A stretch of 64,000 nucleotides of DNA from contig NW_026262674.1 of assembly GCF_021869535.1 (NCBI RefSeq), forward strand, positions 2,852,001 to 2,916,000. Reading direction: 5' to 3'. The notes beneath the pieces were generated by a model. That model did not search any database. It had not been told where the DNA came from and saw only the letters and a list, made by a program, of their open reading frames with translations. This document shows positions 1-31,204 of the stretch, piece by piece. The DNA comes from Mytilus californianus (lineage: Eukaryota). Both the position numbers and the translations under genes were made by a program. Every line of letters starts with the position of its first letter. Within the stretch, counting starts at the first letter, position 1.

Positions 1-249
1 TTTATTTAAGATATTTTGTCGGTATCAACTCTGCATGTGTCAGTGTAATAATCTCTCTGGTCAAAAATCTCTCAGCTGTGCTCATACAAATAGCAATGTC
101 TTCATTTGCTGAAAAATATAATTATATCATTTTAGAAGCTAAAATATAACAATAAACAAGTATATCAGTCATGTTAAAAGTTAAAATAAAAAAAACAAAT
201 TTTAAAATCTTTGATCTAGTGATGTAGTCACTCATCTTTTACCATTATT

Positions 250-694
250 TTGTAATGTAAGCACCGGGATCTTGACAGCCACCCATCCTATATCACAACA
301 TTGTAATGTAAGCACCGGGATCTTGACAGCCACACATCTTATACCACAACATTGTAATGTAAGCACCAGGATCTTGACAGCCACCCATCTTATACCACAA
401 CATTGTAATGTAAGCACCGGGATCTTGACAACCACCCATCTTATACCACAACAGTGTGATGTAAGCATTAGGATCTTGACAGCCACCCATCTTATAACAC
501 AACATTGTAATGTAAGCACCAGGATCTTGACAGCCACCCATCCTATATAACAGCATTGTAATGTAAGCACCAGGATCTTGACAGCCACCCATATCTTATA
601 ACACAACATTGTAATGTAAGCACCAGGATCTTGACAGTCACCCATCCTATATCACAGCATTGTAATGTAAGCACCAGGATCTTGACAGCCACCC
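250..694. repeat. Minisatellite, 51-bp unit, ~8.7 copies
   Basis: Unit ttgtaatgtaagcaccaggatcttgacagccacccatcttataccacaaca recurs at 250, 301, 352 and onward; the ORF track shows matching 17-aa periodicity. Confidence 0.97.
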
Positions 695-5355: not shown

Positions 5356-6180
5356 TTTCCCCTCCAAGATCATTATATAGATAGTTGATTTTAAACAAAC
5401 AAAAATGATTAAATCTCTCTGTAAATTATGTTTCTACCATAAGAATTGATAATATGTTTCTCCTTTGAATGAAAATTCATACAAATAAATTGCATTTCTA
5501 TGTTAAAGTTTTCAGATGTAATAAAACAAAATTAAATGTATACATGCAACAATCATTTGAGATAAAAAAAAATGACGGTAATGATTTTCAGTCACCTAAA
5601 CTACCTGTAATATTGTATCATATTGATATTCATAAAAAAATCATGTATATAGCGATGGAAGAGTCTGTCAGTATGTTCGTTCCTCCAGTCCTCTTTCCTT
5701 TCTTTTGTCATTCTTTCCACTTTCGTATCTGCAACTGCTCAACAGAAATATTTGAAACTTTGACAGATATTTTATCACATAATGGACTTTTGAATCTTTA
5801 ATTTCGATTCTTCATCTGAAAGATTGTTGTGGTTTAGTCTGGGTTGCCATGGTCTGTGCACTCAGTCATATCTGCATACTTAGTTCCTAAACACTTTATT
5901 ACAATTTATTGAAATATTCTTAAAGTAGCAATCTTAACCGTATATGCTATTGTGCACCTCCTATTTTTTTTTTATCGTAATCATTTTGGGACTTCCTTTA
6001 CCAAAGCATGAACTATGGACGGTGAATCATTTTGTGAGCTTTGCTCAAGTCTGAACATTCAACTTTCTAAATTAACTTTCTTGAACAAACGCTTGACATG
6101 TTTGGAATCAAAATTGGTCTTCAATTGTTTGGTACACATTTAATTAAGTTATGTTGAAAACTTGTTGTTTCTAAAAAAAA

Positions 6181-9100
6181 CATTGTAAAGTAATGCCATT
6201 CAAACATGTGACGTAATATTGTAAAGTAATGCCATTCAAACATGTGACGTAATATTGTAAAGTAATGCCATTCAAACATGTGACGTAATATTGGAAAGTA
6301 ATGCCATTCAAACATGTGACGTAATATTGGAAAGTAATGCCATTCAAACATGTGACGTAATATTATAAATTAATGCCATTCAAACATGTGACGTAATATT
6401 GTAAAGTAATGCCATTCAAACATGTGACGTAATATTGTAAAGTAATGCTATTCAAACATGTGTCGAAACATTGTAAAGTAATGTCATTCAAACATGTGTC
6501 GTAACATTGAAAGGTAAAGCCATCCAAACATGTGTCGAAACATTTTAAAGTAATGTCATTCAAACATGTGTCGAAACATTATAAAGTAATGTCATTCGAA
6601 CATGTGTCGAAACATTGTAAAGTAATGCCATTCAAAAATGTGTCGAAATATGTAAAATAATGCCATTCAAACATGTGTCGAAACATTGTAAAATAATGCC
6701 ATTCAAACATGTGTCGAAACATTGTAAAGTAATGCCATTCAAACATGTATCGTAACATTGTAAAATAATGCCATTCAAACATGTGACGAAACATTGTAAA
6801 ATAATGCCATTCAAACATGTGACGTAACATTGGAAAATAATGCCATTCAAACATGTGACGTAACATTGGAAAATAATGCCATTCAAACATGTGACGAAAC
6901 ATTGTAAAGTAACGCCATTCAAACATGTGACGAAACATTGTAAAATAATGCCATTCAAACATGTGACGTAACATTGGAAAGTAATGCCATTCAAACATGT
7001 GACGTAACATTGTAAAGTAATGCCATTCAAACATGTGTCGAACTATTGTAAAGTAAAGCCAGTCAAACATATTACGTAACTTGTGAAGTAAAGCCATTCA
7101 ATCATGTGACGTAACATTGTATAGTAATGCCATTCAAACATGTGACGTAACATTGGAAAATAATGCCATGCAAACATGTGACGTAACATTGTATAGTAAT
7201 GCCATTCAAACATATGTGACGTAACATTGTAAAGTAATGCCATTCAAACATGTGACGTTACATTGTATGGTAATGCCATTCAAACATGTGACGTAACACT
7301 GTAAAGTAATGCCATTTAAACATGTGACGTAACATTGGAAAATAATGCCATTCAAACATGTGACGTAACATTGTAAAGTAATGCCATTCAAACTCTTGAC
7401 GTAACATTGTAAAGTAATGCCATTCAAAAATGTGACGTGACATTATATAGTAATGCCATACAAACATGTGACGTAACATATATTAAAGTAATGCCATTCA
7501 AACATGTGACGTAACATTGGAAAGTGATGCCATTCAAACATAATTATTACGTAACTTGTGAAGTAAAGCCATTCAATCATGTGACGAAACATTGTAAAGC
7601 AATGTCATTCAAACATGTGACGTAACATTGTAAAGTAATGCAATTCAAACATGTGACGTAATATTGTAAAGTAATGCCATTCAAACATGTGACGTAACAT
7701 TGTAAAGTAATGCCATTCAAACATGTGACGTAATATTGTAAAGTAATGCTATTCAAACATGTGATGTAACATTGTAAAGTAATGCCATTCAAACATGTGA
7801 CGTAACATTGTTTAGTAATGCCATCCAAACATGTAACGTAACATTGTAAAGTAATGTCATTCAAACATGTGACGTAACATTGTAAAGTAATGCCATTCAA
7901 ACATGTGACGTAACATTGTAAAGTAATGCCATTCAAACATGTGACGTAACATTGTAAAGTAATGCCATTCAAACATGGGACGTCACATTGTAAAGTAAAG
8001 CCATTCAAACATGGGACGTAACATTGTAAAGTAAAGCCATCCAAACATGTGACGTAACATTGTAAAGTAAAGCCATACAAACATGTGACGTAACATTGTA
8101 AAGTAAAGCCATCCAAACATGTGACGTAACATTGTAAAGTAAAGCCATCCAAACATGTGACGTCACATTGTAAAGTAAAGCCATCCAAACATGTGACGTA
8201 ACATTGTAAAGTAATGCCATTCAAACATGTGACGTAACATTGTAAAGTAATGCCATTCAAACATGTGACATGTGACATAACATTGTGAAGTAAAGCCATT
8301 CAATCATGTGACGAAACATTGTAAAGGAATGCCATTCAAACACGTGACGTAACATTGTAAAGTAATGCCATTCAAACATGTGAAGTAACATTGTATAGTA
8401 ATGCCATTCAATCATGTGACGAAACATTGCAAAATAATGCCATTCAAACATGTGACGTAACATTGTAAAGTAATGCCATTCAAACATTTGTCGAAATATT
8501 GTAAAGTAATGCTATTCAAACATGTGACATAACATTGTAAAGTAATGCCATTCAAACATGTGACATGTGACATAACATTGTGAAGTAAAGCAATTCAATC
8601 ATGTGACGAAACATTGTAAAGTAATGCCATTCAAACACGTGACGTAACATTGTAAAGTAATGCCATTCAAACATGTGAAGTAACATCGATAGTAATGCCA
8701 TTCAATCATGTGACGAAACATTGCAAAATAATGCCATTCAAACATGTGACGTAACATTGTAAAGTAATGCAATTCAAACATGTGACGTAATATTGTAAAG
8801 TAATGCCATTCAAACATGTGACGTAACATTGTAAAGTAATGCTATTCAAACATGTGACGTAATATTGTAAAGTAATGCTATTCAAACATGTGACGTAACA
8901 TTGTAAAGTAATGCCATTCAAACATGTGACGTAACATTGTTTAGTAATGCCATCCAAACATGTAACGTAACATTGTAAAGTAATGTCATTCAAACATTTG
9001 ACGTAACATTGTAAAGTAATGCCATTCAAACATGTGACGTAACATTGTAAAGTAAAGCCATCCAAACATGTGACGTAACATTGTAAAGTAAAGCCATCCA

Positions 9101-12100
9101 AACATGTGACGTAACATTGTAAAGTAAAGCCATCCAAACATGTGAAGTAACATTGTATAGTAATGCCATTCAATCATGTGACGAAACATTGCAAAATAAT
9201 GCCATTCAAACATGTGACGTAACATTGTAAAGTAATGCCATTCAAACATTTGTCGAAATATTGTAAAGTAATGCTATTCAAACATGTGACGTAACATTGT
9301 TTAGTAATGCCATCCAAACATGTAACGTAACATTGTAAAGTAATGTCATTCAAACATGTGACGTAACATTGTAAAGTAATGCCATTCAAACATGTGACGT
9401 AACATTGTAAAGTAATGCCATTCAAACATGTGACGTAACATTGTAAAGTAATGCCATTCAAACATGGGACGTCACATTGTAAAGTAAAGCCATTCAAACA
9501 TAAGACGTAACATTGTAAAGTAAAGCCATCCAAACATGTGACGTAACATTGTAAAGTAAAGCCATACAAACATGTGACGTAACATTGTAAAGTAAAGCCA
9601 TCCAAACATGTGACGTAACATTGTAAAGTAAAGCCATCCAAACATGTGACGTAACATTGTAAAGTAAAGCCATCCAAACATGTGACGTAACATTGTAAAG
9701 TAATGCCATTCAAACATGTGACGTAACATTGTAAAGTAATGCCATTCAAACATGTGACATGTGACATAACATTGTGAAGTAAAGCAATTCAATCATGTGA
9801 CGAAACATTGTAAAGAAATGCCATTCAAACACGTGACGTAACATTGTAAAGTAATGCCATTCAAACATGTGAAGTAACATCGATAGTAATGCCATTCAAT
9901 CATGTGACGAAACATTGCAAAATAATGCCATTCAAACATGTGACGTAACATTGTAAAGTAATGCAATTCAAACATGTGACGTAATATTGTAAAGTAATGC
10001 CATTCAAACATGTGACGTAACATTGTAAAGTAATGCTATTCAAACATGTGACGTAATATTGTAAAGTAATGCTATTCAAACATGTGACGTAACATTGTAA
10101 AGTAATGCCATTCAAACATGTGACGTAACATTGTTTAGTAATGCCATCCAAACATGTAACGTAACATTGTAAAGTAATGTCATTCAAACATTTGACGTAA
10201 CATTGTAAAGTAATGCCATTCAAACATGTGACGTAACATTGTAAAGTAATGCCATTCAAACATGTGACGTAACATTGTAAAGTAATGCCATTCAAACATG
10301 GGACGTCACATTGTAAAGTAAAGCCATTCAAACATGGGACGTAACATTGTAAAGTAAAGCCATCCAAACATGTGACGTAACATTGTAAAGTAAAGCCATC
10401 CAAACATGTGAAGTAACATTGTATAGTAATGCCATTCAATCATGTGACGAAACATTGCAAAATAATGCCATTCAAACATGTGACGTAACATTGTAAAGTA
10501 ATGCCATTCAAACATTTGTCGAAATATTGTAAAGTAATGCTATTCAAACATGTGACGTAACATTGTAAAGTAATGCCATTCAAACATGTGACATGTGACA
10601 TAACATTGTGAAGTAATGCCATTCAAACATGTGACGTAACATTGTTTAGTAATGCCATCCAAACATGTAACGTAACATTGTAAAGTAATGTCATTCAAAC
10701 ATTTGACGTAACATTGTAAAGTAATGTCATTCAAACATTTGACGTAACATTGTAAAGTAATGCCATTCAAACATGTGACGTAACATTGTAAAGTAATGCC
10801 ATTCAAACATGTGACGTAACATTGTAAAGTAATGCCATTCAAACATGGGACGTCACATTGTAAAGTAAAGCCATTCAAACATGGGACGTAACATTGTAAA
10901 GTAAAGCCATCCAAACATGTGACGTAACATTGTAAAGTAAAGCCATCCAAACATGTGAAGTAACATTGTATAGTAATGCCATTCAATCATGTGACGAAAC
11001 ATTGCAAAATAATGCCATTCAAACATGTGACGTAACATTGTAAAGTAATGCCATGCAAACATTTGTCGAAATATTGTAAAGTAATGCTATTCAAACATGT
11101 GACGTAACATTGTAAAGTAATGCCATTCAAACATGTGACATGTGACATAACATTGTGAAGTAAAGCAATTCAATCATGTGACGAAACATTGTAAAGTAAT
11201 GCCATTCAAACACGTGACGTAACATTGTAAAGTAATGCCATTCAAACATGTGAAGTAACATTGTATAGTAATGCCATTCAATCTTGTGACGAAACATTGC
11301 AAAATAATGCCATTCAAACATGTGACGTAACATTGTAAAGTAATGCCATTCAAACATTTGTCGAAATATTGTAAAGTAATGCTATTCAAACATGTGACGT
11401 AACATTTTAAAGTAATGCCATTCAAACATGTGACATGTGACATAACATTGTGAAGTAAAGCAATTCAATCATGTGACGAAACATTGTAAAGTAATGCCAT
11501 TCAAACACGTGACGTAACATTGTAAAGTAATGCCATTCAAACATGTGAAGTAACATCGATAGTAATGCCATTCAATCATGTGACGAAACATTGCAAAATA
11601 ATGCCATTCAAACATGTGACGTAACATTGTAAAGTAATGCAATTCAAACATGTGACGTAATATTGTAAAGTAATGCCATTCAAACATGTGACGTAACATT
11701 GTAAAGTAATGCTATTCAAACATGTGACGTAATATTGTAAAGTAATGCTATTCAAACATGTGACGTAACATTGTAAAGTAATGCCATTCAAACATGTGAC
11801 GTAACATTGTTTAGTAATGCCATCCAAACATGTAACGTAACATTGTAAAGTAATGTCATTCAAACATTTGACGTAACATTGTAAAGTAATGCCATTCAAA
11901 CATGTGACGTAACATTGTAAAGTAATGCCATTCAAACATGTGACGTAACATTGTAAAGTAATGCCATTCAAACATGGGACGTCACATTGTAAAGTAAAGC
12001 CATTCAAACATGTGACGTAACATTGTAAAGTAAAGCCATCCAAACATGTGACGTAACATTGTAAAGTAAAGCCATACAAACATGTGACGTAACATTGTAA

Positions 12101-12762
12101 AGTAAAGCCATCCAAACATGTGACGTAACATTGTAAAGTAAAGCCATCCAAACATGTGACGTAACATTGTAAAGTAAAGCCATCCAAACATGTGAAGTAA
12201 CATTGTATAGTAATGCCATTCAATCATGTGACGAAACATTGCAAAATAATGCCATTCAAACATGTGACGTAACATTGTAAAGTAATGCCATTCAAACATT
12301 TGTCGAAATATTGTAAAGTAATGCTATTCAAACATGTGACGTAACATTGTAAAGTAATGCCATTCAAACATGTGACATGTGACATAACATTGTGAAGTAA
12401 AGCAATTCAATCATGTGACGAAACATTGTAAAGTAATGCCATTCAAACACGTGACGTAACATTGTAAAGTAATGCCATTCAAACATGTGAAGTAACATTG
12501 TATAGTAATGCCATTCAATCTTGTGACGAAACATTGCAAAATAATGCCATTCAAACATGTGACGTAACATTGTAAAGTAATGCCATTCAAACATTTGTCG
12601 AAATATTGTAAAGTAATGCCATTCAAACATGTGACGTAACATTTTAAAGTAATGCCATTCAAATATGTGTCGAAATATTGTAAAACAATGCTATTCAAAC
12701 ATGTGTCGAAACATTGTAAAGTAATGCCATTCAAACATGTGACGAAACATTGTAAAATAATG
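6181..12762. repeat. Satellite, 36-bp unit, ~180 copies, with higher-order structure
   Basis: Consensus aacattgtaaagtaatgccattcaaacatgtgacgt over ~6.6 kb; 12-aa periodic ORFs in two minus frames; diagnostic variant units recur in blocks. Confidence 0.99.
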
Positions 12763-12994
12763 TGATTGCTTCTTTGTTAGAAACTAGAAGTTTGTTGGTC
12801 TGTTTATCAAATTAAATGGCAGACGGTTGACAGAGACCATCCTCTTTAGTGAGAATTTCCTTGTAATGTTTTCCATTGTTTGTTGTAATGACTGCATTTG
12901 AAGAAGCCTCTCCGACAACGAAGATGTTTCCGTCATTATCTAAACAAATGCCGGCAAGACACTGCAGTAAAACTGAATCATCCTTAAATAGATA

Positions 12995-13183
12995 TAAGAA
13001 GATGTGGTATGAGTGCCAATGAGACAACTCTCCATCCAAGTCAAAATTTATAAAAGTAAACCAATATAGGTCAAAGGACGGTCTTCAACACGGAGCCTTG
13101 GCTCACACCGAACAGCAAGCTATAAAGGGCCCCAAAAATTACTAGTGTAAAAAACGAGAAACGAGAAACACTTATGAACCACA
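12995..13183 (+). mobile_element. Dispersed repeat (agaagatgtggtatgagtgccaatgagacaact family) inserted in the pseudogene
   Basis: Near-identical copies at ~39845-40020 and ~61195-61420. It splits the propeller frame between HIWT and FKDDS. Confidence 0.85.
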
Positions 13184-13814
13184 TGTCCAAATATGTGATC
13201 CATTATAATCACAACATACTACACTGTGAATGTCTCTATTAGTGAAGTAAATCTTGTTTTCGAATACAGATATGTTAGAATTCATGTGCAAGTCATAATT
13301 GATCACCGAGAGGGAATATTATCAACAATGTTAAGTTTAGTAATACCACGTCCTTCAACACAGACAAACATTGAGTCATAATCACGTGCGATAACCCTTG
13401 ACGATTACGAAGGTTGATGAATTTAATTTTCTTTTGGCTTTCAACGTCAATAATGTGAATTCCAGTCTTCTTTAAGGACCCTCCGAATATGATAGCCACA
13501 GTTTTATCATTGATAAATATTGAGTCAAATTAGCTACTATGATCAAACATCATGTTATAACTGAATGTACCATTAGACTGCACAACCTTCAGCATTTTAT
13601 GGTCAATGAAGAATACATCGCCACAAACTTATATGCAACAACCTCTAATACTAGTATTGTCCCCACCTGTTTTAATTTTCTTTAACTAATTTCACATTAA
13701 TAATGGTTCTCGCTGGATCTTTAATCATTTCTTTTTCAAGTTTGTCAAATTGTTTATTTATTTGAGTTCTTATTTGTTGAATATGTGCAAGATTTTGTTT
13801 CTTCTTTTTTTTTC

Positions 13815-15207
13815 TGAGTCTAACAGTCTAGTTTCTAAATCTTGATAGTCTTTGGATGCCTTAGTGACTTCAGACGACAAGAGAGATTCAGATTTGGAAA
13901 TTGGTGCTAGTTCATTATTTTGGGTTACACAAATGGCCTTTTCACATGACTCTGAGTCTTACGTTCTAGTTTCTAAATCTTGAAAGTCCGTTGATGTCTT
14001 TTTAGTGACTTCAAACGACAAGAGATATTCTGCTTTGGAAATTGGTGCTAGTTCATTATTTTGGGTTACACAAATGGCCTTTTCACATGACTCCGAGTCT
14101 TACGTTCTAGTTTCTAAAACTTGAAAGTCCGTTGATGTCTTTTTAGTGACTTCAAGCGACAAGAGAGATTCGGATTTGGAAATTGGTGCTAGTTCATTAT
14201 TTCGTGTTGCACAAATGGCTTTTTCACATGACTCTGAGTCTAACGTTCTAGTTTCTAAATCTTGAAAGTCCGTTGATGTCTTTTTAATGACTTCAAACGA
14301 CAAGAGAGATTCGGATTTGGAAATTGGTGCTAGTTCATTATTTCGGGTTGCACAAATGGCTTCTTCACATGACTCTGAGTCTAGCAGTCTAGTTTCCAAA
14401 TCTTGAATGTTCTTGGATGTCTTTGTTACTTCAAACGACAAGCGAGATGCAGATTTGGGAATTGGTGCTAGTTCATTATTTCGTGTTGCACAAATGGCCT
14501 TTTCACATGACTCTAAGTCTAACAGTCTAGTTTCTAGATCTTGAAAGTCTTTAGATGTCTTAGTGACTTTAAACGACAAGAGAGATTCGGATTTGGAAAT
14601 TGGTGCTAGTTCATTATTTCGGGTTGCACAAATGGCTTTTTCACATGACTCTGAGTCTAACAGTCTAGTTTCTAGATCTTGAAAGTCTTTGGATGTCTTA
14701 GTGACTTCAAACGGCAAGAGAGATTCGGATTTGGAAATTGGTGCTAGTTCATTATTTCGGGTTGCACAAATGGCTTCGTCACATGACTCTGAGTCTAGCA
14801 GTCTAGTTTCCAAATCTTGAATGTTCTTGGATGTCTTAGTTACTTCAAACGACAAGCGAGATGCAGATTTGGGAATTGGTGCTAGTTCAGTATTTCGTGT
14901 CGCACAAATGGCTTTTTCACATGACTCTGAGTCTAACAGTCTAGCGTCTAGATCTTGAAAGTCTTTGGATGTCTTAGTGACTTCAAACGACAAGCGAGAT
15001 TCAGATTTGGAAATTGGTGCTAGTTCATTATTTCGGGTTGCACAAATGGCCTTTTCACATGACTCTGAGTCTAACGGTCTTGTTTCTAGATCTTGAAAGT
15101 CTTTGGATGTCTTAGTGACTTCAAACGACAAGAGAGATTCTAATTTGGAAATTAGTGCTAGTTCATTTTTTCGGGTTGCAAAAATGGCTTCTTCACATGA
15201 CTCTGAT
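13815..15207 (-). repeat. Coding-type tandem repeat, 138/141-bp unit (46/47 aa), ~10 copies
   Basis: ORF 14100-15131 repeats SFEVTKTSKDFQDLETRLLDSESCEKAICATRNNELAPISKSESLL; units are spaced ~138-141 bp apart. Confidence 0.95.
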
Positions 15208-15569
15208 TGCCAGATTTATGTTGATATTTTGGCCATCGGGATACCTGAAATATATATATATATATATATGTAATCTTATATACAACTGGATGATTCTGTT
15301 TAGTCCCATGATAACCAGTATTTCTTTCTTAAATATTCAATCAAATGCCATTCAATATTTTATTGGAAAGAGCACAATAGAGGTGATCCAAATAAAGATA
15401 TAGTTGAGACGTTTTTCCTCCGTTCACACACATGCACTTTTTCATCACATTGAAATGCTTCAAATGTCTTCTCTACTTTATTAGTTAATAATACTCCATT
15501 TCACTAGCATCTTTTTACTACAAATATTTGGAAAGTATCTTAATTTTAAAGCAACATGATTATTGAACA

Positions 15570-16320: not shown

Positions 16321-16764
16321 TCATTTTATGGAAAAGAAATATGTTTATAACACTATGGATGTCCATAACACAGATTCTGATAAAGTTTCTCGAGCAGAAA
16401 ACATAACTATTAAGTAAACCTAATATCAAGGAATATTGTCGTACTTAATTAAAGAGCAGTTAAATATCATGGGTATACTACAATGGGCTCTCAAGTATGG
16501 GTATACATTCAAATAATTCAAAAAGTCCCTCATGCATAAAATGAAACACAAAAAATTACAACTATGTGTGATAGGTTTACTGATAAGACCATAACTGCAT
16601 TGTAAGCTTGAAAATGTTTTTCATTTCAATTCTGCTATTCAAATACCTTTATCTTTAAAATTGAGAATGGAATTGGGGAATGTGTCAAAGAGACAACAAC
16701 CCGACCAAAGAGCGGAAAACAGCCGAAGGCCACCAATGGGTCTTCAACACAGCGAGTTGAACCA

Positions 16765-16992
16765 TTGAACTTTAACCATTCCTAGGAGAATCCTAAGACA
16801 ATCTTTTTGACCAAACAGTGAAGCCAAAAAAACAGGTGTTAGTTCCTGACCAGCACAAATGTCAAGTCGAGCACCATGTCTTACTAAATAGGCATGGACA
16901 GTAGCATGACCGTTCACTGCAGCAGTGTATAGAGCAGTGTATCCTGAGAAGATCTGGTGGTTTATGTGGGCTCCATTTTCCAGTAGCACTTT
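16765..16992 (-). pseudogene. Ankyrin-repeat coding fragment (about 2.5 repeats); exon of an unresolved gene or a gene remnant
   Basis: VLLENGAHINHQIFSGYTALYTAAVNGHATVHAYLVRHGARLDICAGQELTPVFLASLFGQKDCLRILL fits the ankyrin consensus (G-x-T-A/P-L-x-x-A-x-x-x-G ... LL-x-x-GA). Dispersed repeats abut both sides. Confidence 0.7.
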
Positions 16993-17460
16993 AAATAAAG
17001 GCAACAGTAGTATATCGCTGTTCAAAAGTCATAAATCTATTGAGAGAAAACAAATCCGGGTTACAAACTAGAACCGAGGGAAACATTAAACGCATCAACT
17101 ATAAGAGGTAAACAATGGAACAACAGAAACACTGAAGTGCAACAAAAACAAACGGCCAGCATACATAGAAACGAACTATTTGATAACAACTGCCATATTC
17201 CTGACTTGGTACAGGACATTTTAAGAAAAATGGTGGGTTGAACCTGGTTTTATGGCTAGCCAAACCTCCCGCTTATATGGTAATGTTAAACAATATCGCT
17301 AAAATGACAACACTACGTGACAGAAATAAAGCACAAAAAACGCAAGAACAATCAGCATAGAGAAACGCACAAATAAATAATATAATAGTCGTTACAACAT
17401 GTAAACCGCAGAATAACAACGAACATCTGCCATTAACGACAGCACAGGACATCACAAACA
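16993..17460 (+). mobile_element. Dispersed repeat (aataaaggcaacagtagtataccgctg family)
   Basis: Related copies at ~38690-38830, ~42540-42710 (reverse), ~54625-55130 and ~58930-59185. Confidence 0.85.
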
Positions 17461-20884: not shown

Positions 20885-20933
20885 GTATATCTAAAAATAG
20901 ACTTCACATCAGGGAAGTTTGATAATACACAAT

Positions 20934-22856
20934 ATGGCGACTTCGGCGGTTATGAAGGTGGAATCTCTTAAAGACAACTTTGATGATTTATTAACATGCA
21001 CTATTTGTCTTGAGACTTTCAAAGAGCCCAAGTATTTGCCCTGTCTTCATACGTTTTGTGAGTCATGTATTAACACTTATATCAATTCGACTGATAATGA
21101 GGAGAAACCAACAGGGTTCAAATGTCCTTTATGTAAACGCCTTGTTTCAATTGTTGACAATGTTGAAAACCCCAAAACATGGGCTAGACAATTACCTTTG
21201 AATCATTTGATAATGTCGATGATAGATAGAAAAGCAATGAAAACATCCGAGAAGCTTTGTGATGCTTGCAGTTTCAGAAATTTATCTCAGAATGCCGTGT
21301 CCTTTTGCACGGTATGCGAGGAGGCATATTGCGAAAACTGTGAGGTTCATCACAAAACATACAAAATAACGCGAAACCACAAAATCGTTCCAATCAAAGA
21401 AATAAATGCTGATAATTCTGCCTTAAATTTGTTGGGAGTTTTCACTTGTGACGAACATCCAGACGAGAGAATAAAGATATATTGCAAAGACCATACAAAG
21501 CCATGTTGTACAGTTTGTGCTACGGTCCATCATAGAAGGTGTGCACAAGTCGTTACCATAGATAAAGCTGTATCCGGTGTAAAAGATTCTACAAAGGCAC
21601 ATGATCTTATGAATAAGTTGAAAGAAAAAAGCGATCAGTTATGCAAAGTTCTTCAAAATCGCAAGCAAAACATATCAACATTTGAAAAAGAAATAGAAGC
21701 TATTGAGACAGGAATAAGTAACTTGCGGGAAAAGTTAAATAGACATTTAGATAAACTTGAACAAAAGTTAAAAGACGAAGTTAGGAACACACGGAAATCT
21801 AACGTCCTAAAACTGAACGATGAAACTATAGTATTATCCACACTAAAGAGCACCATTGATAATTGGAAGAATATTTTTGAGGCTTGTTTATTTCAAGGAT
21901 CGGAATTACAATGTTTGGTTACAATGGAAGATATATTTAGTAAACTACCACAGTTCGAAGAGGATTTGTCTAAAGTAGTGCGTGAAATCCGAGAACTATC
22001 AGTAGAAATAGAAGTTACAGATGTTATTAAAAAAGTAGACACTCTTGGTAGTGTTAGTCTGAAAGAACGAAGACCTTCGATCTCTGGAATAAAGACCATA
22101 AATTTCCTCACAGGAAAATTTAAAGTTGTATTTACAATAGATATTAGTGGACACTATATAAGTGGAATATTCTTTAATGATGATATAGTTATAACAGATT
22201 ATAGTAGTAAGAAGATAGTTAGCTATGACCCCAACGGACAAAAGAAGAAAGAACTAAAAATTTATGATAAACCGTCTGACATCACTAAAGTGAATGGTGA
22301 AACTGTTGCTGTGTCGTCATACCCACACAAGATCTTTGAGATTAATATTGAAGCAATGACATTACTGAGAACGCTGACCGTTAATGTAAATGTATGGGGA
22401 TTGTGTTTTGTAGGAGATGAATATATTACCTCTCAATGTAAAACTATTTCATGGTTGAACTCTGAAACCGGTGCAAAACTTAGATGTTGTACTACGGGTT
22501 CAAATACACCATTTGTTACTTGTTACAAGTCGAATAAGTACATCTATACAAATAGCAATAATTCTATCAGACAAGAATCGACCACAGAAAAATGTTTCGA
22601 TTACAATAGTAAAGCTTTAGTAACTCCGCTTAGCCAGGCTATTGATTATGATGGGAATGTTTACGCTGTTGGGCATGAATCTAAAAACATTCATCAGCTA
22701 ACCTCTACTGGAGAATTCGTCCGAATAATTCCTTTATCCGATATAGATAATACATTGAATGCTAATCCGTGGGTAATGCGATTTAAAGAGGATAGTAACA
22801 GGTTTCTGTTGACGTTTCATTATCAAGGAAAAGTACGTATATGCGAAATTGAATAG
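20934..22856 (+). CDS. TRIM-like E3 ubiquitin ligase (RING, two B-boxes, coiled coil, NHL-like beta-propeller), 640 aa, single coding exon
   Basis: RING CTICLETFKEPKYLPCLHTFCESC...CPLC; B-box1 CDAC...CTVCEEAYCENCEVHH...H; B-box2 CDEH...YCKDHTKPCCTVCATVHHRRC; heptad region; propeller motif AIDYDGNVYAVG. The ATG at 20934 (aatATGG) is preferred over the TTG at 20919. Confidence 0.93.
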   Translation: MATSAVMKVESLKDNFDDLLTCTICLETFKEPKYLPCLHTFCESCINTYINSTDNEEKPTGFKCPLCKRLVSIVDNVENPKTWARQLPLNHLIMSMIDRKAMKTSEKLCDACSFRNLSQNAVSFCTVCEEAYCENCEVHHKTYKITRNHKIVPIKEINADNSALNLLGVFTCDEHPDERIKIYCKDHTKPCCTVCATVHHRRCAQVVTIDKAVSGVKDSTKAHDLMNKLKEKSDQLCKVLQNRKQNISTFEKEIEAIETGISNLREKLNRHLDKLEQKLKDEVRNTRKSNVLKLNDETIVLSTLKSTIDNWKNIFEACLFQGSELQCLVTMEDIFSKLPQFEEDLSKVVREIRELSVEIEVTDVIKKVDTLGSVSLKERRPSISGIKTINFLTGKFKVVFTIDISGHYISGIFFNDDIVITDYSSKKIVSYDPNGQKKKELKIYDKPSDITKVNGETVAVSSYPHKIFEINIEAMTLLRTLTVNVNVWGLCFVGDEYITSQCKTISWLNSETGAKLRCCTTGSNTPFVTCYKSNKYIYTNSNNSIRQESTTEKCFDYNSKALVTPLSQAIDYDGNVYAVGHESKNIHQLTSTGEFVRIIPLSDIDNTLNANPWVMRFKEDSNRFLLTFHYQGKVRICEIE

Positions 22857-22996
22857 AAAAGTACGTATATTCGAAATTGAATAGAAAAGTACGTATATGC
22901 GAAATTGAATAGAAAAGTACGTACATGCGAAATTGAATAGAAAAGTACGTATATGCGAAATTGAATAGAAAAGTACGTATATGCGAAATTGGATAG
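22829..22996 (+). repeat. 28-bp tandem repeat x6 made of the TRIM gene's last 8 codons plus stop
   Basis: aaaagtacgtatatgcgaaattgaatag at 22829, 22857, 22885, 22913, 22941 and 22969. The first copy encodes KVRICEIE* and contains the real stop. Confidence 0.97.
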
Positions 22997-23442
22997 ACAG
23001 GCCTTACTGGCTAAATTTGAAAAATAAAAATGTCACTAATATGTTAAAATGGATTACACAAAATGATTTGCTCTCATTTAATCTGTTGTTATATCACTAA
23101 AAATAAAATTAATCTGTTTAAACCAAATATTCCCTTAGTGGCCATTTGATATTAAAAAAGTGAAAGGAACAACAAACAATGAACGAGTAATTGCATTTAG
23201 GGAATTTTAGGTAATAAAAGACGGGAAATTGTTTTATTTTTGTCTTTTTGTCATGGGATTGCCAGTTTACTTTGGTATATGTCGCCTCTCTTTTAAACCT
23301 GTATGCACAGTAAAATTTTAATTTGATCACTGAAGGTGAAATCTTCGATATGACTGTTTCCACTACTTATTATCCTAGGCATGTATATGTATGACAATCA
23401 GTAAATCAATATATCCGTTGCTTAGATGGCCGCAGAAATAAA

Positions 23443-28750: not shown

Positions 28751-30486
28751 AATGGTCATTATCATAAATTGGTCATTTATTATCAGGTGAATGGTATGCT
28801 TAAATCCTTGAATGAGTCGTTCATCTCCATTGAATGGTCATCATCATAAATTGGTCATTCATTATCAGGTGAATGGTATGCTTAAATCCTTGAATGAGTC
28901 GTCCATCTCCATTGAATGGTCATCATCATAAATTGGTCATTCATTATCAGGTGAATGGTATGCTTAAATCCTTGAATGAGTCGTCCATCTCCATTGAATG
29001 GTCATCATCATAAATTGGTCATTCATTATCAGGTGAATGGTATGCTTAAATCTTTGAATGAGTCGTCCATCTCCATTGAATGGTCATCATCATAAATTGG
29101 TCATTCATTATCAGGTGAATGGTATGCTTAAATCCTTGAATGAGTCGTCCATCTCCATTGAATGGTCATCATCATAAATTGGTCATTCATTATCAGGTGA
29201 ATGGTATGCTTAAAGTCCTTGAATGAGTCGTCCATCTCCATTGAATGGTCATCATCATAAATTGGTCATTCATTATCAGGTGAATGGTATGCTTAAATCC
29301 TTGAATGAGTCGTCCATCTCCATTGAATGGTCATCATCATAAATTGGTCATTCATTATCAGGTGAATGGTATGCTTAAATCCTTGAATGAGTCGTCCATC
29401 TCCATTGAATGGTCATCATCATAAATTGGTCATTCATTATCAGGTGAATGGTATGCTTAAAGTCCTTGAATGAGTCGTCCATCTCCATTGAATGGTCATC
29501 ATCATAAATTGGTCATTCATTATCAGGTGAATGGTATGCTTAAATCCTTGAATGAGTCGTCCATCTCCATTGAATGGTCATCATCATAAATTGGTCATTC
29601 ATTATCAGGTGAATGGTATGCTTAAATCCTTGAATGAGTCGTCCATCTCCATTGAATGGTCATCATCATAAATTGGTCATTCATTATCAGGTGAATGGTA
29701 TGCTTAAATCCTTGAATGAGTCGTCCATCTCCATTGAATGGTCATCATCATAAATTGGTCATTCATTATCAGGTGAATGGTATGCTTAAATCTTTGAATG
29801 AGTCGTCCATCTCCATTGAATGGTCATCATCATAAATTGGTCATTCATTATCAGGTGAATGGTATGCTTAAATCCTTGAATGAGTCGTCCATCTCCATTG
29901 AATGGTCATCATCATAAATTGGTCATTCATTATCAGGTGAATGGTATGCTTAACGTCCTTGAATGAGTCGTCCATCTCCATTGAATGGTCATCATCATAA
30001 ATTGGTCATTCATTATCAGGTGAATGGTATGCTTAAATCCTTGAATGAGTCGTCCATCTCCATTGAATGGTCATCATCATAAATTGGTCATTCATTATCA
30101 GGTGAATGGTATGCTTAAAGTCCTTGAATGAGTCGTCCATCTCCATTGAATGGTCATCATCATAAATTGGTCATTCATTATCAGGTGAATGGTATGCTTA
30201 AATCCTTGAATGAGTCGTCCATCTCCATTGAATGGTCATCATCATAAATTGGTCATTCATTATCAGGTGAATGGTACGCTTAAAGTCCTTGAATGAGTCG
30301 TCCATCTCCATTAAATGGTCATCATCATAAATGGTCATTCATTATCAGGTGAATGGTATGCTTAAATCCTTGAATGAGTCGTCCATCTCCATTGAATGGT
30401 CATCATCATAAATTGGTCATTCATTATCAGGTGAATGGTATGCTTAAAGTCCTTGAATGAGTAGTCTATCTACATTGAATGGTCAT
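28751..30486. repeat. Satellite, 82-bp unit (some 83 bp), ~21 highly homogeneous copies
   Basis: Unit atcataaattggtcattcattatcaggtgaatggtatgcttaaatccttgaatgagtcgtccatctccattgaatggtcatc; period checked at 29521 versus 29603. Confidence 0.98.
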
Positions 30487-31204
30487 GATCACCTAAAACT
30501 TACATTTTCCCGCGTTTCAAAGAATAGCGGGCAACATTTGTATTAACGATGCGTATGAATTTTCTAATTTAGTCACGTGAAAATTTTCATGTGTGGGAAA
30601 ATATTTTGAAAGCCTTCACTTTCTATCCAACAGTCGTAGTGTCAAGTTTATTTTTACATATTTCAGATATGTAATAATTTTTGGTTTTAATTCATGTTTT
30701 TGCTCATGATTCGTTGTGTTTTGTTTCGAATAATTATATATATATATCTTTTTTTTATACTGTCCAAGTATACCTCTTGAGACGGTCTTCCGAGCATTGG
30801 GTTTTTGGACACAGGTTTCCAACTTTTTTTCACTACATATTTAGTTATTAATGTAGTTTGAACGAGTTAACTCGTTTTAGTTGGTTGTTCCTGGCCGGCG
30901 GGATCGTCGATGATAGAGACTTTATCATTATTTGTTATTTAACTTAAAAATACAGCATACCAGCATTCAGTCATCATTTATAATTGTAATGATTTATTTA
31001 TGTATTTATGCTTATGAGTTATATTCGTGAATTTATTGAAATCCGGTGTCCTTCAAGCTGTCTGGGTTATCGGCAATATGAATATATTGTTTTGTTTTAT
31101 TTAAGCCTATTTATTTATGGGAAAGAAGTTAAGGTAATACACTTATTGCATCTGTAACGTGAACATTTAAGGGCAAGGCAGAATACCAACAAACACATAA
31201 AATA

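What the first reader, a model, noticed from the sequence alone, without database searches (positions are those of the whole stretch)
6181..12790. The 6.6-kb satellite is an expansion of the terminal 11 codons of a TRIM-like gene
Seen: the minus-strand frame runs ...FDKQTNKLLVSNKEAIT-LFYNVSSHV-TGA (stop at 12731-12733) directly into the array. The unit atggcattactttacaatgttacgtcacatgtttga reads MALLYNVTSHV*. The seed copy is therefore the gene's final beta-strand plus stop. This is an unusually traceable birth of a satellite from coding sequence. The direction of origin (gene to satellite) is inferred.
Basis: partly seen in the sequence, partly recalled or inferred. Interest (0 to 1): 0.8.

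Follow-up and report, generated by a model that had tools for sequence, protein, structure and literature searches.

The report
Minisatellite born from a pseudogene's tail
A 6.6-kb, single-locus array of 36-base repeats in the California mussel genome was made by repeatedly copying the last few codons, the old stop codon and nine following bases of a now-dead TRIM-NHL-like gene; the origin is unusually easy to trace, but the process is ordinary and the array is probably functionless.

Summary
Window 6179-12766 (minus strand) holds 181 head-to-tail 36-bp units plus an 18-nt partial unit. They start directly at the end of a TRIM-like reading frame.

The 36-mer occurs nowhere else in the 1.65-Gb assembly, which is Mytilus californianus: 141 genome hits, the same 141 as in the window.

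The direction gene to array is supported. Intact 561-aa paralogues end ...ETAFLYNVT-TAA without an array. The whole unit aligns ungapped, 28/36, with their last 8 codons, the stop and 9 nt of 3'UTR. An AlphaFold model shows TAFLYxV is the final strand of a six-bladed NHL propeller.

- The unit straddles the family's ancestral stop. TAA became TCA in this lineage, which added three codons up to the next TGA.
- The host is a badly decayed pseudogene, not a gene. It also carries a second array (138 bp x10) made of its own B-box region.
- This is a single-locus minisatellite, not a satellite.

A neighbouring intact TRIM gene has a 28-bp x6 repeat of its own last codons plus stop. A test on 50 family members found no clear excess of such events over the background rate of tandem duplication.

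Verdict: real and neatly traceable, mechanistically ordinary, probably neutral.

The parts
6179..12766 (-). 36-bp minisatellite: 181 units plus an 18-nt partial unit. Mean pairwise unit identity is 85%. Some multi-unit blocks are duplicated at 94-95% identity.
12731..12766 (-). First unit. It is the pseudogene's own last 11 codons plus TGA (ATC ACA TTA TTT TAC AAT GTT TCG TCA CAT GTT TGA). In coded organism D the orthologue reads ATG GCA at its start, as the array consensus does.
12731..15212 (-). Decayed intronless B-box / coiled-coil / NHL-propeller (TRIM71-like) pseudogene. It is colinear with 561-aa paralogues but lacks the first ~22 codons, B-box2 and about 150 codons of coiled coil. It has stops and at least two frameshifts.
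12812..12814 (-). In-frame TAA where paralogues have a Phe codon (SAI*FDKQ versus SAIFFDKQ).
12988..13184 (.). Insertion of a very high-copy dispersed element that splits the last propeller blade (...GSHIWT | FKDDS...).
   Evidence: depth 10^5-10^7 versus single digits beside it; loose ends at 12988/12994 and 13184
13813..15206 (-). Second array of the same pseudogene: 138 bp (46 codons) x10, 90% matches. The unit is the second half of B-box1 (CEEAIC...ATRxxELxPIxKxxSLxSF) joined to the coiled-coil start (EVT..TS..FQDLETRLxD), with B-box2 deleted.

Best explanation
This is a locus-specific minisatellite, born in place from the 3' end of one member of the very large Mytilus family of intronless B-box / coiled-coil / NHL-propeller ('TRIM71-like') genes.

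Shown: the repeated 36-bp segment is the gene's own tail. It comprises the codons of the last propeller strand (T/M-A-F/L-L-Y-N-V-T), the family's ancestral stop codon (TAA, already mutated to TCA in this lineage) and the next 9 nt up to a second in-frame TGA.

Inferred: a first tandem duplication arose by replication slippage or unequal exchange. An imperfect direct repeat, TTACAATGTT ... TTAATATGTT, is present in the tail and 3'UTR of the closest paralogues and may have helped. Because the duplicated piece contains a stop, the first copy still ends the protein normally. All further copies lie in the 3'UTR, so the array could grow without harming the protein. Growth to 181 copies went by unequal crossing-over, including duplication of blocks of tens of units.

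Shown: the host gene is now a pseudogene. It has a premature TAA, frameshifts, internal deletions, a repeat-element insertion and a second array of its own B-box region.

Inferred: the array is best read as neutral, non-functional DNA.
For: - Array and junction.
- Locus restriction: 141 genome hits equal the 141 window hits. BLAST of an array piece finds one locus only. The positive control for dispersal worked.
- Homology of the unit to the family tail: the multiple alignment of 17 paralogue tails runs without gaps through the stop into the 3'UTR. The ungapped unit-to-paralogue match is 28/36, the same divergence as the gene body (71-77%).
- Position of the best match: it lies at the predicted position in 15 of 19 loci, and the score exceeded the largest of 20 shuffles in most of them.
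- Tail conservation: the AFLYxV tail is kept even in 40%-identical members.
- Structure: the final strand in the AlphaFold2 model (pLDDT 94.4) is residues 265-271, TAFLYSV. The fold is an NHL propeller, TM 0.72-0.79 to Thin, Brat and TRIM2.
- Order of events: none of 152 exact-length units keeps TAA at the ex-stop codon; 124 have TCA. The stop was therefore lost before amplification, or the change was homogenised.
- Independent data: a contig from another sample of the same species spans 12733-13010 with 0 differences. A 93%-identical orthologue contig in coded organism D breaks at the same unit1/unit2 border, and array-like words are present there.
- Block duplications: 94-95% identical copies lie 1266, 1813 and 3050 bp apart. 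Unit-lag identity peaks at lags of 71-105 units.
- Pseudogene status.
- Expression: no RNA reads on the array or tail in the one RNA run laid, of which about 6% was read.
Against: - The distal end of the array is not a clean duplication boundary. It stops in mid-unit (...TTACAATGTT) against unrelated sequence, so a later deletion or decay must be assumed.
- The 3' flank could not be matched to paralogue 3'UTRs. A multi-copy repeat lies about 130 bp beyond the array.
- The order of pseudogenisation and amplification is unknown.
- The array length rests on one assembly. Short-read contigs confirm the units and the junction, not the 6.6 kb.
- Absence of function rests on one RNA run and on lack of conservation evidence, not on a test.
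- The microhomology that may have seeded slippage is weak: about 9/11 in AT-rich sequence.
Confidence: 0.85

Rival explanations
1. The 3' ends of these intronless TRIM-NHL genes are a mechanistic hot spot for tandem duplications that include the stop codon. On this view the array is one extreme outcome of a recurrent, family-specific process rather than a chance event.
For: - The intact TRIM gene 8 kb away (20919-22856, + strand) is followed by 28 bp x6, made of its own last 8 codons plus stop.
- Among paralogues, L034/L025 has a 99-nt and L037/L046/L048 a ~264-nt tandem duplication straddling the stop.
- The same pseudogene carries a second array made of its own sequence.
Against: - In 50 family loci, tandem duplications cover the stop in 4 (8%). 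These are probably only 2 independent events.
- The background is 3-6% of positions in the 3' flank and 0-3% inside the CDS. That is no clear excess over neutral background.
- None of the 20 more distant members shows such a duplication.
- The profile fits random duplication plus selection, since only duplications that include the stop spare the protein.
Confidence: 0.1
2. A pre-existing satellite, for example one carried by a mobile element, landed next to or truncated the gene. On this view the resemblance to a coding tail is coincidental, or the direction is satellite to gene.
For: - Bivalve tandem repeats are commonly carried by mobile elements (PMC7492417, PMC11136912).
- A dispersed 51-bp repeat lies 5.5 kb away and shares a 15-nt stretch (14/15 identical) with the unit.
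Against: - The 36-mer exists at this locus only.
- Dozens of paralogues on other contigs carry the homologous sequence once, at the same position and colinear over all 36 nt.
- The unit's divergence from the paralogues equals that of the gene body.
Confidence: 0.02
3. The array is functional, for example as a regulatory or structural RNA source, a chromatin element, or a coding repeat in another frame.
For: - The two other frames of the array are open over about 90-107 codons.
- Array-like words also occur in a second, coded species, so the array may be several million years old.
Against: - No RNA reads on the array or tail in the RNA run laid.
- Units have diverged to 85% mean pairwise identity, with indels of 35-42 nt that break any frame.
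- The host gene is dead.
- The open frames are what a 36-nt (12-codon) period gives whenever a frame of the unit lacks a stop.
Confidence: 0.04
4. The array length is an assembly artefact, through over-expansion or collapse of a shorter or longer repeat.
For: Only one assembly was available. Short-read contigs cannot span the array.
Against: - Units carry many distinct variants arranged in large non-identical blocks, which is not the look of an artefactual expansion.
- Independent runs of the same species show array units at depths up to about 50 times the flanking single-copy depth. The tool warns that this is not a copy number.
Confidence: 0.04

Closest known systems
Minisatellites / VNTRs at gene 3' ends (single-locus arrays of 10-100-bp units made by slippage and unequal exchange; general knowledge)
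   Same: Unit of 36 bp, head-to-tail, one locus, a few kb. Grown by unequal exchange with block duplications. Lies in what was the 3'UTR.
   Different: The unit can be traced base by base to the last propeller strand, the former stop and 9 nt of UTR of the host gene. The copy number (181) is high. Length polymorphism was not tested.
Satellite DNAs seeded from identifiable non-satellite sequence (rDNA spacer, mobile-element parts; 'any random sequence' in theory: PMC5615363; TE-derived arrays PMC7004042, PMC9659126; OwlRep PMC5765563)
   Same: Tandem amplification of a short piece of pre-existing unique or functional sequence whose source can still be recognised.
   Different: The source here is protein-coding sequence plus its stop codon, not rDNA or a mobile element. 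The array has not spread beyond its birthplace and is tiny compared with true satellites.
Mobile-element-borne satellite-like arrays of bivalves (Helentron-associated repeats in oysters, PMC7492417; TE-related satDNAs, PMC11136912)
   Same: Short arrays in euchromatic, gene-rich bivalve DNA. The 51-bp repeat at window 229-694 behaves this way (726 dispersed hits).
   Different: The 36-bp array is not dispersed (141 of 141 hits at this locus) and has no element-like flanks.
The 28-bp x6 'stop-codon repeat' of the neighbouring intact TRIM gene
   Same: The unit is the gene's own last 8 codons plus stop, and the first copy terminates the protein normally.
   Different: It has 6 copies instead of 181, an intact host gene, an unrelated unit sequence and a different TRIM subfamily (RING present, 645 aa).

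Membership tests
Minisatellite (single-locus tandem array) | Unit of about 10-100 bp repeated head to tail | tested here: met
   Period 36, 181.5 copies, 89% matches; unit parsing.
Minisatellite (single-locus tandem array) | Confined to one locus | tested here: met
   141 genome-wide hits equal the 141 window hits. BLAST of an array piece finds one locus.
Minisatellite (single-locus tandem array) | Length polymorphism among individuals | not testable with these tools
   Only short-read contigs of other individuals were available.
Classical satellite DNA | High genomic abundance, with long arrays at several loci or in heterochromatin | tested here: not met
   One array of 6.6 kb in 1.65 Gb.
Mobile-element-borne satellite-like repeat | Many dispersed short arrays with shared flanks | tested here: not met
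   No copy outside the locus. By contrast the 51-bp repeat has 726 dispersed hits.
TRIM-NHL proteins (host gene family, judged on intact paralogues) | B-box zinc finger | tested here: met
   PF00643 at 30.6 bits (cut-off 24.1) in L020 ORF. The database names it 'TRIM71-like [Mytilus californianus]'.
TRIM-NHL proteins (host gene family, judged on intact paralogues) | C-terminal six-bladed NHL propeller | tested here: met
   AlphaFold2 model with pLDDT 94.4 and 24 strands. Foldseek top hits are the Thin, Brat, Mei-P26 and TRIM2 NHL domains, TM 0.72-0.79. The Pfam NHL hit alone is below cut-off.
TRIM-NHL proteins (host gene family, judged on intact paralogues) | N-terminal RING finger | tested here: not met
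   No RING family among the Pfam hits of two 561-aa paralogues. The proteins start directly with a B-box. Hence 'TRIM-like'.
TRIM-NHL proteins (host gene family, judged on intact paralogues) | Coiled coil between B-box and propeller | tested here: inconclusive
   Only sub-threshold Pfam coiled-coil hits (PML_CC, KIF21A_4th).
Functional gene (the window copy itself) | Uninterrupted reading frame colinear with paralogues | tested here: not met
   TAA at 12812-12814, 2 stops in 13398-13682, matches in three frames, internal deletions, inserted repeat.

The most novel reading that the evidence does not exclude
Tandem duplications that include the stop codon are a recurrent, mechanistically favoured way in which the 3' ends of Mytilus intronless TRIM-NHL genes evolve. 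Examples are the two adjacent genes in this window and at least two further independent events among 50 paralogues. Such duplications would create 3'UTR arrays that can grow into satellites and perhaps contribute to gene death. The 6.6-kb array would be the end point of that series.
Probability: 0.1. Interest if true: 0.5.

Novelty: new member of a known kind. Interest (0 to 1): 0.3.

Why it matters
Sources of tandem arrays are usually unrecognisable, or are mobile elements or rDNA spacers. Here every base of the unit can be assigned to a codon, a former stop or a UTR base of a known gene family, with dozens of single-copy paralogues as outgroups. That makes it a clean teaching example of how a minisatellite is born. 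It also illustrates a simple rule: a tandem duplication inside a gene is harmless only if it carries the stop codon with it. It does not reveal a new mechanism, and it is most likely neutral DNA in a dead gene.

Tried and rejected
1. Hot-spot idea. I tested whether tandem duplications are enriched at stop codons in 50 family loci. The stop was covered in 8% of loci against 3-6% in the 3' flank, which is not convincing.

2. Relation between the 51-bp repeat at 229-694 and the 36-mer. They share a 15-nt stretch, 14 of 15 identical (shuffle p about 0.001). The 51-mer is a dispersed repeat (726 hits), so it is unrelated in origin. I treat the match as chance or unexplained.

3. Gradient along the array. 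Identity to the paralogue tail is 25.9-27.6 of 36 in every sector. No polarity of growth can be read.

4. Short higher-order period. There is only a weak signal at a lag of 8 units. The stronger signals are large block duplications.

5. Matching the distal flank to paralogue 3'UTRs. This was not possible. Window ~5645-6050 is a multi-copy repeat, and the last ~130 bp next to the array are unique.

6. Literature. I found no description of this array or of a Mytilus 36-bp repeat. The reviews read name rDNA spacers and mobile elements as known seeds and allow 'any random sequence' (PMC5615363; PMC10048060).

7. Pfam hits of the 343-aa repeat ORF (Diedel, RNase P p29 and others). None has a matched stretch that passes on its own, so I treat them as repeat-inflated noise.
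Full report
**Observation**

Tandem Repeats Finder reports one array at window 6179-12762 with period 36, 181.5 copies and 89% matches. Read on the minus strand, the frame ...FDKQTNKLLVSNKEAITLFYNVSSHV ends with TGA at 12733-12731. The next 36 nt already form the first regular unit. Walking the array unit by unit gives 181 units: 152 of exactly 36 nt and the rest 35-42 nt. An 18-nt partial unit follows and stops at about 6179 against unrelated sequence. The window has no N.

**Is it locus-restricted?**

The window is contig C94:2852001-2916000 of a 1.65-Gb assembly with 175 contigs.

- The consensus 36-mer with up to 3 mismatches has 141 hits in the whole assembly, all on the reverse strand, and none for the reversed control.
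- The same pattern counted in the window alone gives 141.
- A 361-bp piece of the array finds a single candidate region, this one.
- The search does detect dispersed repeats: the 51-bp repeat at window 229-694 gave 726 hits on many contigs and both strands.

**Whose genome and which gene family?**

An intact paralogue ORF (L020) is 100% identical to an NCBI protein named 'E3 ubiquitin-protein ligase TRIM71-like [Mytilus californianus]'. All close relatives are Mytilus proteins of about 561 aa. A C-terminal query finds 1302 candidate loci in the genome.

- Pfam finds a B-box above threshold and only weak NHL and beta-propeller signals.
- An AlphaFold2 model of the C-terminal 272 residues, built from a 38-sequence alignment, has pLDDT 94.4 and 24 strands.
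- Its best structural matches are the NHL domains of Thin, Brat, Mei-P26 and TRIM2, TM 0.72-0.79.
- No RING was found.

The family is therefore B-box / coiled-coil / NHL, 'TRIM-like', and intronless. Seven of 19 sampled loci have one open 560-562-aa frame.

**Direction of origin**

The 238 bp upstream of the array find at least 20 paralogous loci at 70-77% identity. Most lie in a cluster on C2 at 64.49-64.77 Mb. Their frames end ...KLLVANxxETAFLYNVT-stop, with no array behind.

A multiple alignment of 17 tails runs without gaps from the coding region through the stop and into the 3'UTR. In codon phase the comparison is:

- paralogue: ACT GCT TTC CTT TAC AAT GTT ACT TAA AAT GAT TGA
- unit: ATG GCA TTA CTT TAC AAT GTT ACG TCA CAT GTT TGA

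That is 28 of 36 identical, ungapped, the same divergence as the gene body.

I aligned a unit dimer locally against each 3.2-kb paralogue locus on both strands. The best hit fell exactly on the predicted CDS end in 15 of 19 loci. Its score exceeded the largest of 20 shuffles in most of them. Such positional coincidence cannot be chance.

The AFLYxV tail is conserved even in 40%-identical members. In the model it is the last beta-strand, residues 265-271, TAFLYSV.

Hence the family tail is ancestral and single-copy, and the array is derived from it.

**Refinements**

1. The unit straddles the family's stop. The TAA of the paralogues is TCA in the units, and the frame runs three codons further to a TGA that also exists in the paralogues' 3'UTR (AAT GAT TGA). 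None of the 152 exact-length units keeps TAA; 124 have TCA. The stop was therefore lost before amplification, or the change was homogenised.

2. The first copy is not special. It matches the paralogue tail at 25/36, against 28/36 for the consensus. In coded organism D the orthologous first copy begins ATG GCA, like the consensus, where the window has ATC ACA (places 12763/12764).

3. No sector of the array is closer to the ancestral sequence than another.

**State of the host gene**

Matches to paralogue proteins run on the minus strand from 15212 to 12743 in three different frames. The damage found is:

- an in-frame TAA at 12812-12814 where paralogues have Phe;
- two more stops in 13398-13682;
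- about 150 codons of coiled coil missing;
- an insertion at 12988-13184 with read depths of 10^5-10^7, a very abundant dispersed element that splits the last blade.

Window 13813-15206 is a second array, 138 bp x10. Its 46-codon unit is the second half of B-box1 joined to the start of the coiled coil, with B-box2 deleted. It is a pseudogene with two arrays made of its own sequence.

**Independent data**

One call of read laying was made on 1,351 letters (window 12450-13800), within the operators' limit.

- A contig from another sample of the same coded species (X2) covers 12733-13010 without a difference. This confirms both the array/gene junction and the junction between the gene and the inserted element.
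- Array bins in X2 reach about 50 times the neighbouring single-copy depth. The tool warns that this is no copy number.
- In coded organism D (X17) a contig 93% identical (16 differences in 233 nt) covers 12732-12964. It begins exactly at the border of unit 1 and unit 2, as the X2 contig does. That is what a 31-mer graph does on entering a repeat. Array-like words are present there at modest depth.

This suggests, but does not prove, that an array already existed before the two species split. It agrees with the 15% mean divergence among units, which exceeds the 7% divergence of the flank.

The RNA run (X21, about 6% read) put no read on the array or the tail.

**Growth**

Mean pairwise unit identity is 85%. 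There is a weak lag-8 signal and stronger peaks at lags of 71-105 units. A 361-bp stretch has 94-95% identical copies 1266, 1813 and 3050 bp away. This is the signature of unequal exchange that duplicates blocks of tens of units.

**Mechanism (inferred)**

A tandem duplication of 36 bp that includes a stop codon leaves the protein unchanged, because the first copy still terminates it. All later copies are 3'UTR. The array could therefore have started while the gene was alive. Whether it did is unknown.

In the closest paralogues the tail motif TTACAATGTT is followed about 27 nt later by TTAATATGTT. This is a weak direct repeat that could have primed slippage.

The distal end of the array is not a clean boundary, so a later deletion or decay has to be assumed.

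**A possible wider pattern, tested**

It ends ...KVRICEIE-TAG and is followed by 28 bp x6 (22828-22997), its own last 8 codons plus stop. Some paralogues also have tandem duplications straddling the stop: period about 99 in L025/L034, and about 264 in L014/L015/L029.

I asked whether stop codons are a hot spot. In 50 family loci, self-comparison found tandem duplications covering the stop in 4 (8%). These are probably only two independent events. The comparison values are 3-6% of positions in the 3' flank and 0-3% within the CDS. None of the 20 more distant members had one.

That profile is what random tandem duplication plus purifying selection predicts. I found no clear excess, and the sample is small because further loci could not be fetched.

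**Comparison with what is known**

Reviews state that tandem arrays can in principle arise from any sequence. They list rDNA spacers and mobile-element parts as documented seeds (PMC5615363; PMC10048060). In bivalves the described arrays are mostly tied to mobile elements (PMC7492417, PMC11136912).

By unit size, length and single-locus status this array is a minisatellite, not a satellite. Its distinguishing feature is the base-by-base traceability to a coding tail and its stop. I found no paper describing it.

**Verdict**

The observation and the gene-to-array direction are confirmed. The host is a pseudogene. The unit spans the ancestral stop. The array is a locus-bound, probably neutral minisatellite. 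It is a tidy example of a known process rather than a new one.

Noticed in passing
window 13813-15206 (minus strand): The same pseudogene carries a second array, 138 bp x10. Its 46-codon unit is a deletion derivative of the gene's own B-box1 joined to the coiled-coil start. The frame stays open for 343 codons.
   Followed up: partly
window 20919-22856 (+) and 22828-22997: An intact 645-aa RING/B-box/propeller TRIM gene ends ...KVRICEIE-stop. It is followed by six 28-bp copies of its own last 8 codons plus stop, a small-scale parallel to the 36-bp array.
   Followed up: partly
L014, L015, L029 (= L037, L046, L048) and L025 (= L034), paralogues on contig C2: Tandem duplications straddle the stop codon. 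In L014/L015/L029 the last ~220 nt of CDS plus stop are repeated once (period ~264, 75-83% identity). In L025 the last ~55 nt plus stop are repeated (period ~99, 72%), with a further copy about 1 kb downstream (81%).
   Followed up: partly
window 229-694: A 51-bp x9 repeat is dispersed genome-wide (726 hits with up to 3 mismatches, both strands, many contigs), typical of element-borne arrays. It shares a 15-nt stretch (14/15 identical) with the 36-bp unit (shuffle p about 0.001), which remains unexplained.
   Followed up: partly
window 12988-13184: A ~200-bp element inserted in the pseudogene's last propeller blade is extremely abundant in DNA contigs of three coded organisms. It is also present in RNA reads.
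   Followed up: no
window 16744-17025 (minus strand): An open frame with ankyrin-repeat-like sequence (...GYTALYTAAVNGHATVHAYLVRHGARLD...) lies upstream of the pseudogene. It is probably an exon of an unrelated gene.
   Followed up: no
window 28751-30491: An 82-bp x21 array (also scored as period 329 x5), 98% matches, very homogeneous. I did not examine it.
   Followed up: no
window ~5645-6050: A multi-copy dispersed repeat (dozens of 66-83% identical hits) lies about 130 bp beyond the distal end of the 36-bp array.
   Followed up: no
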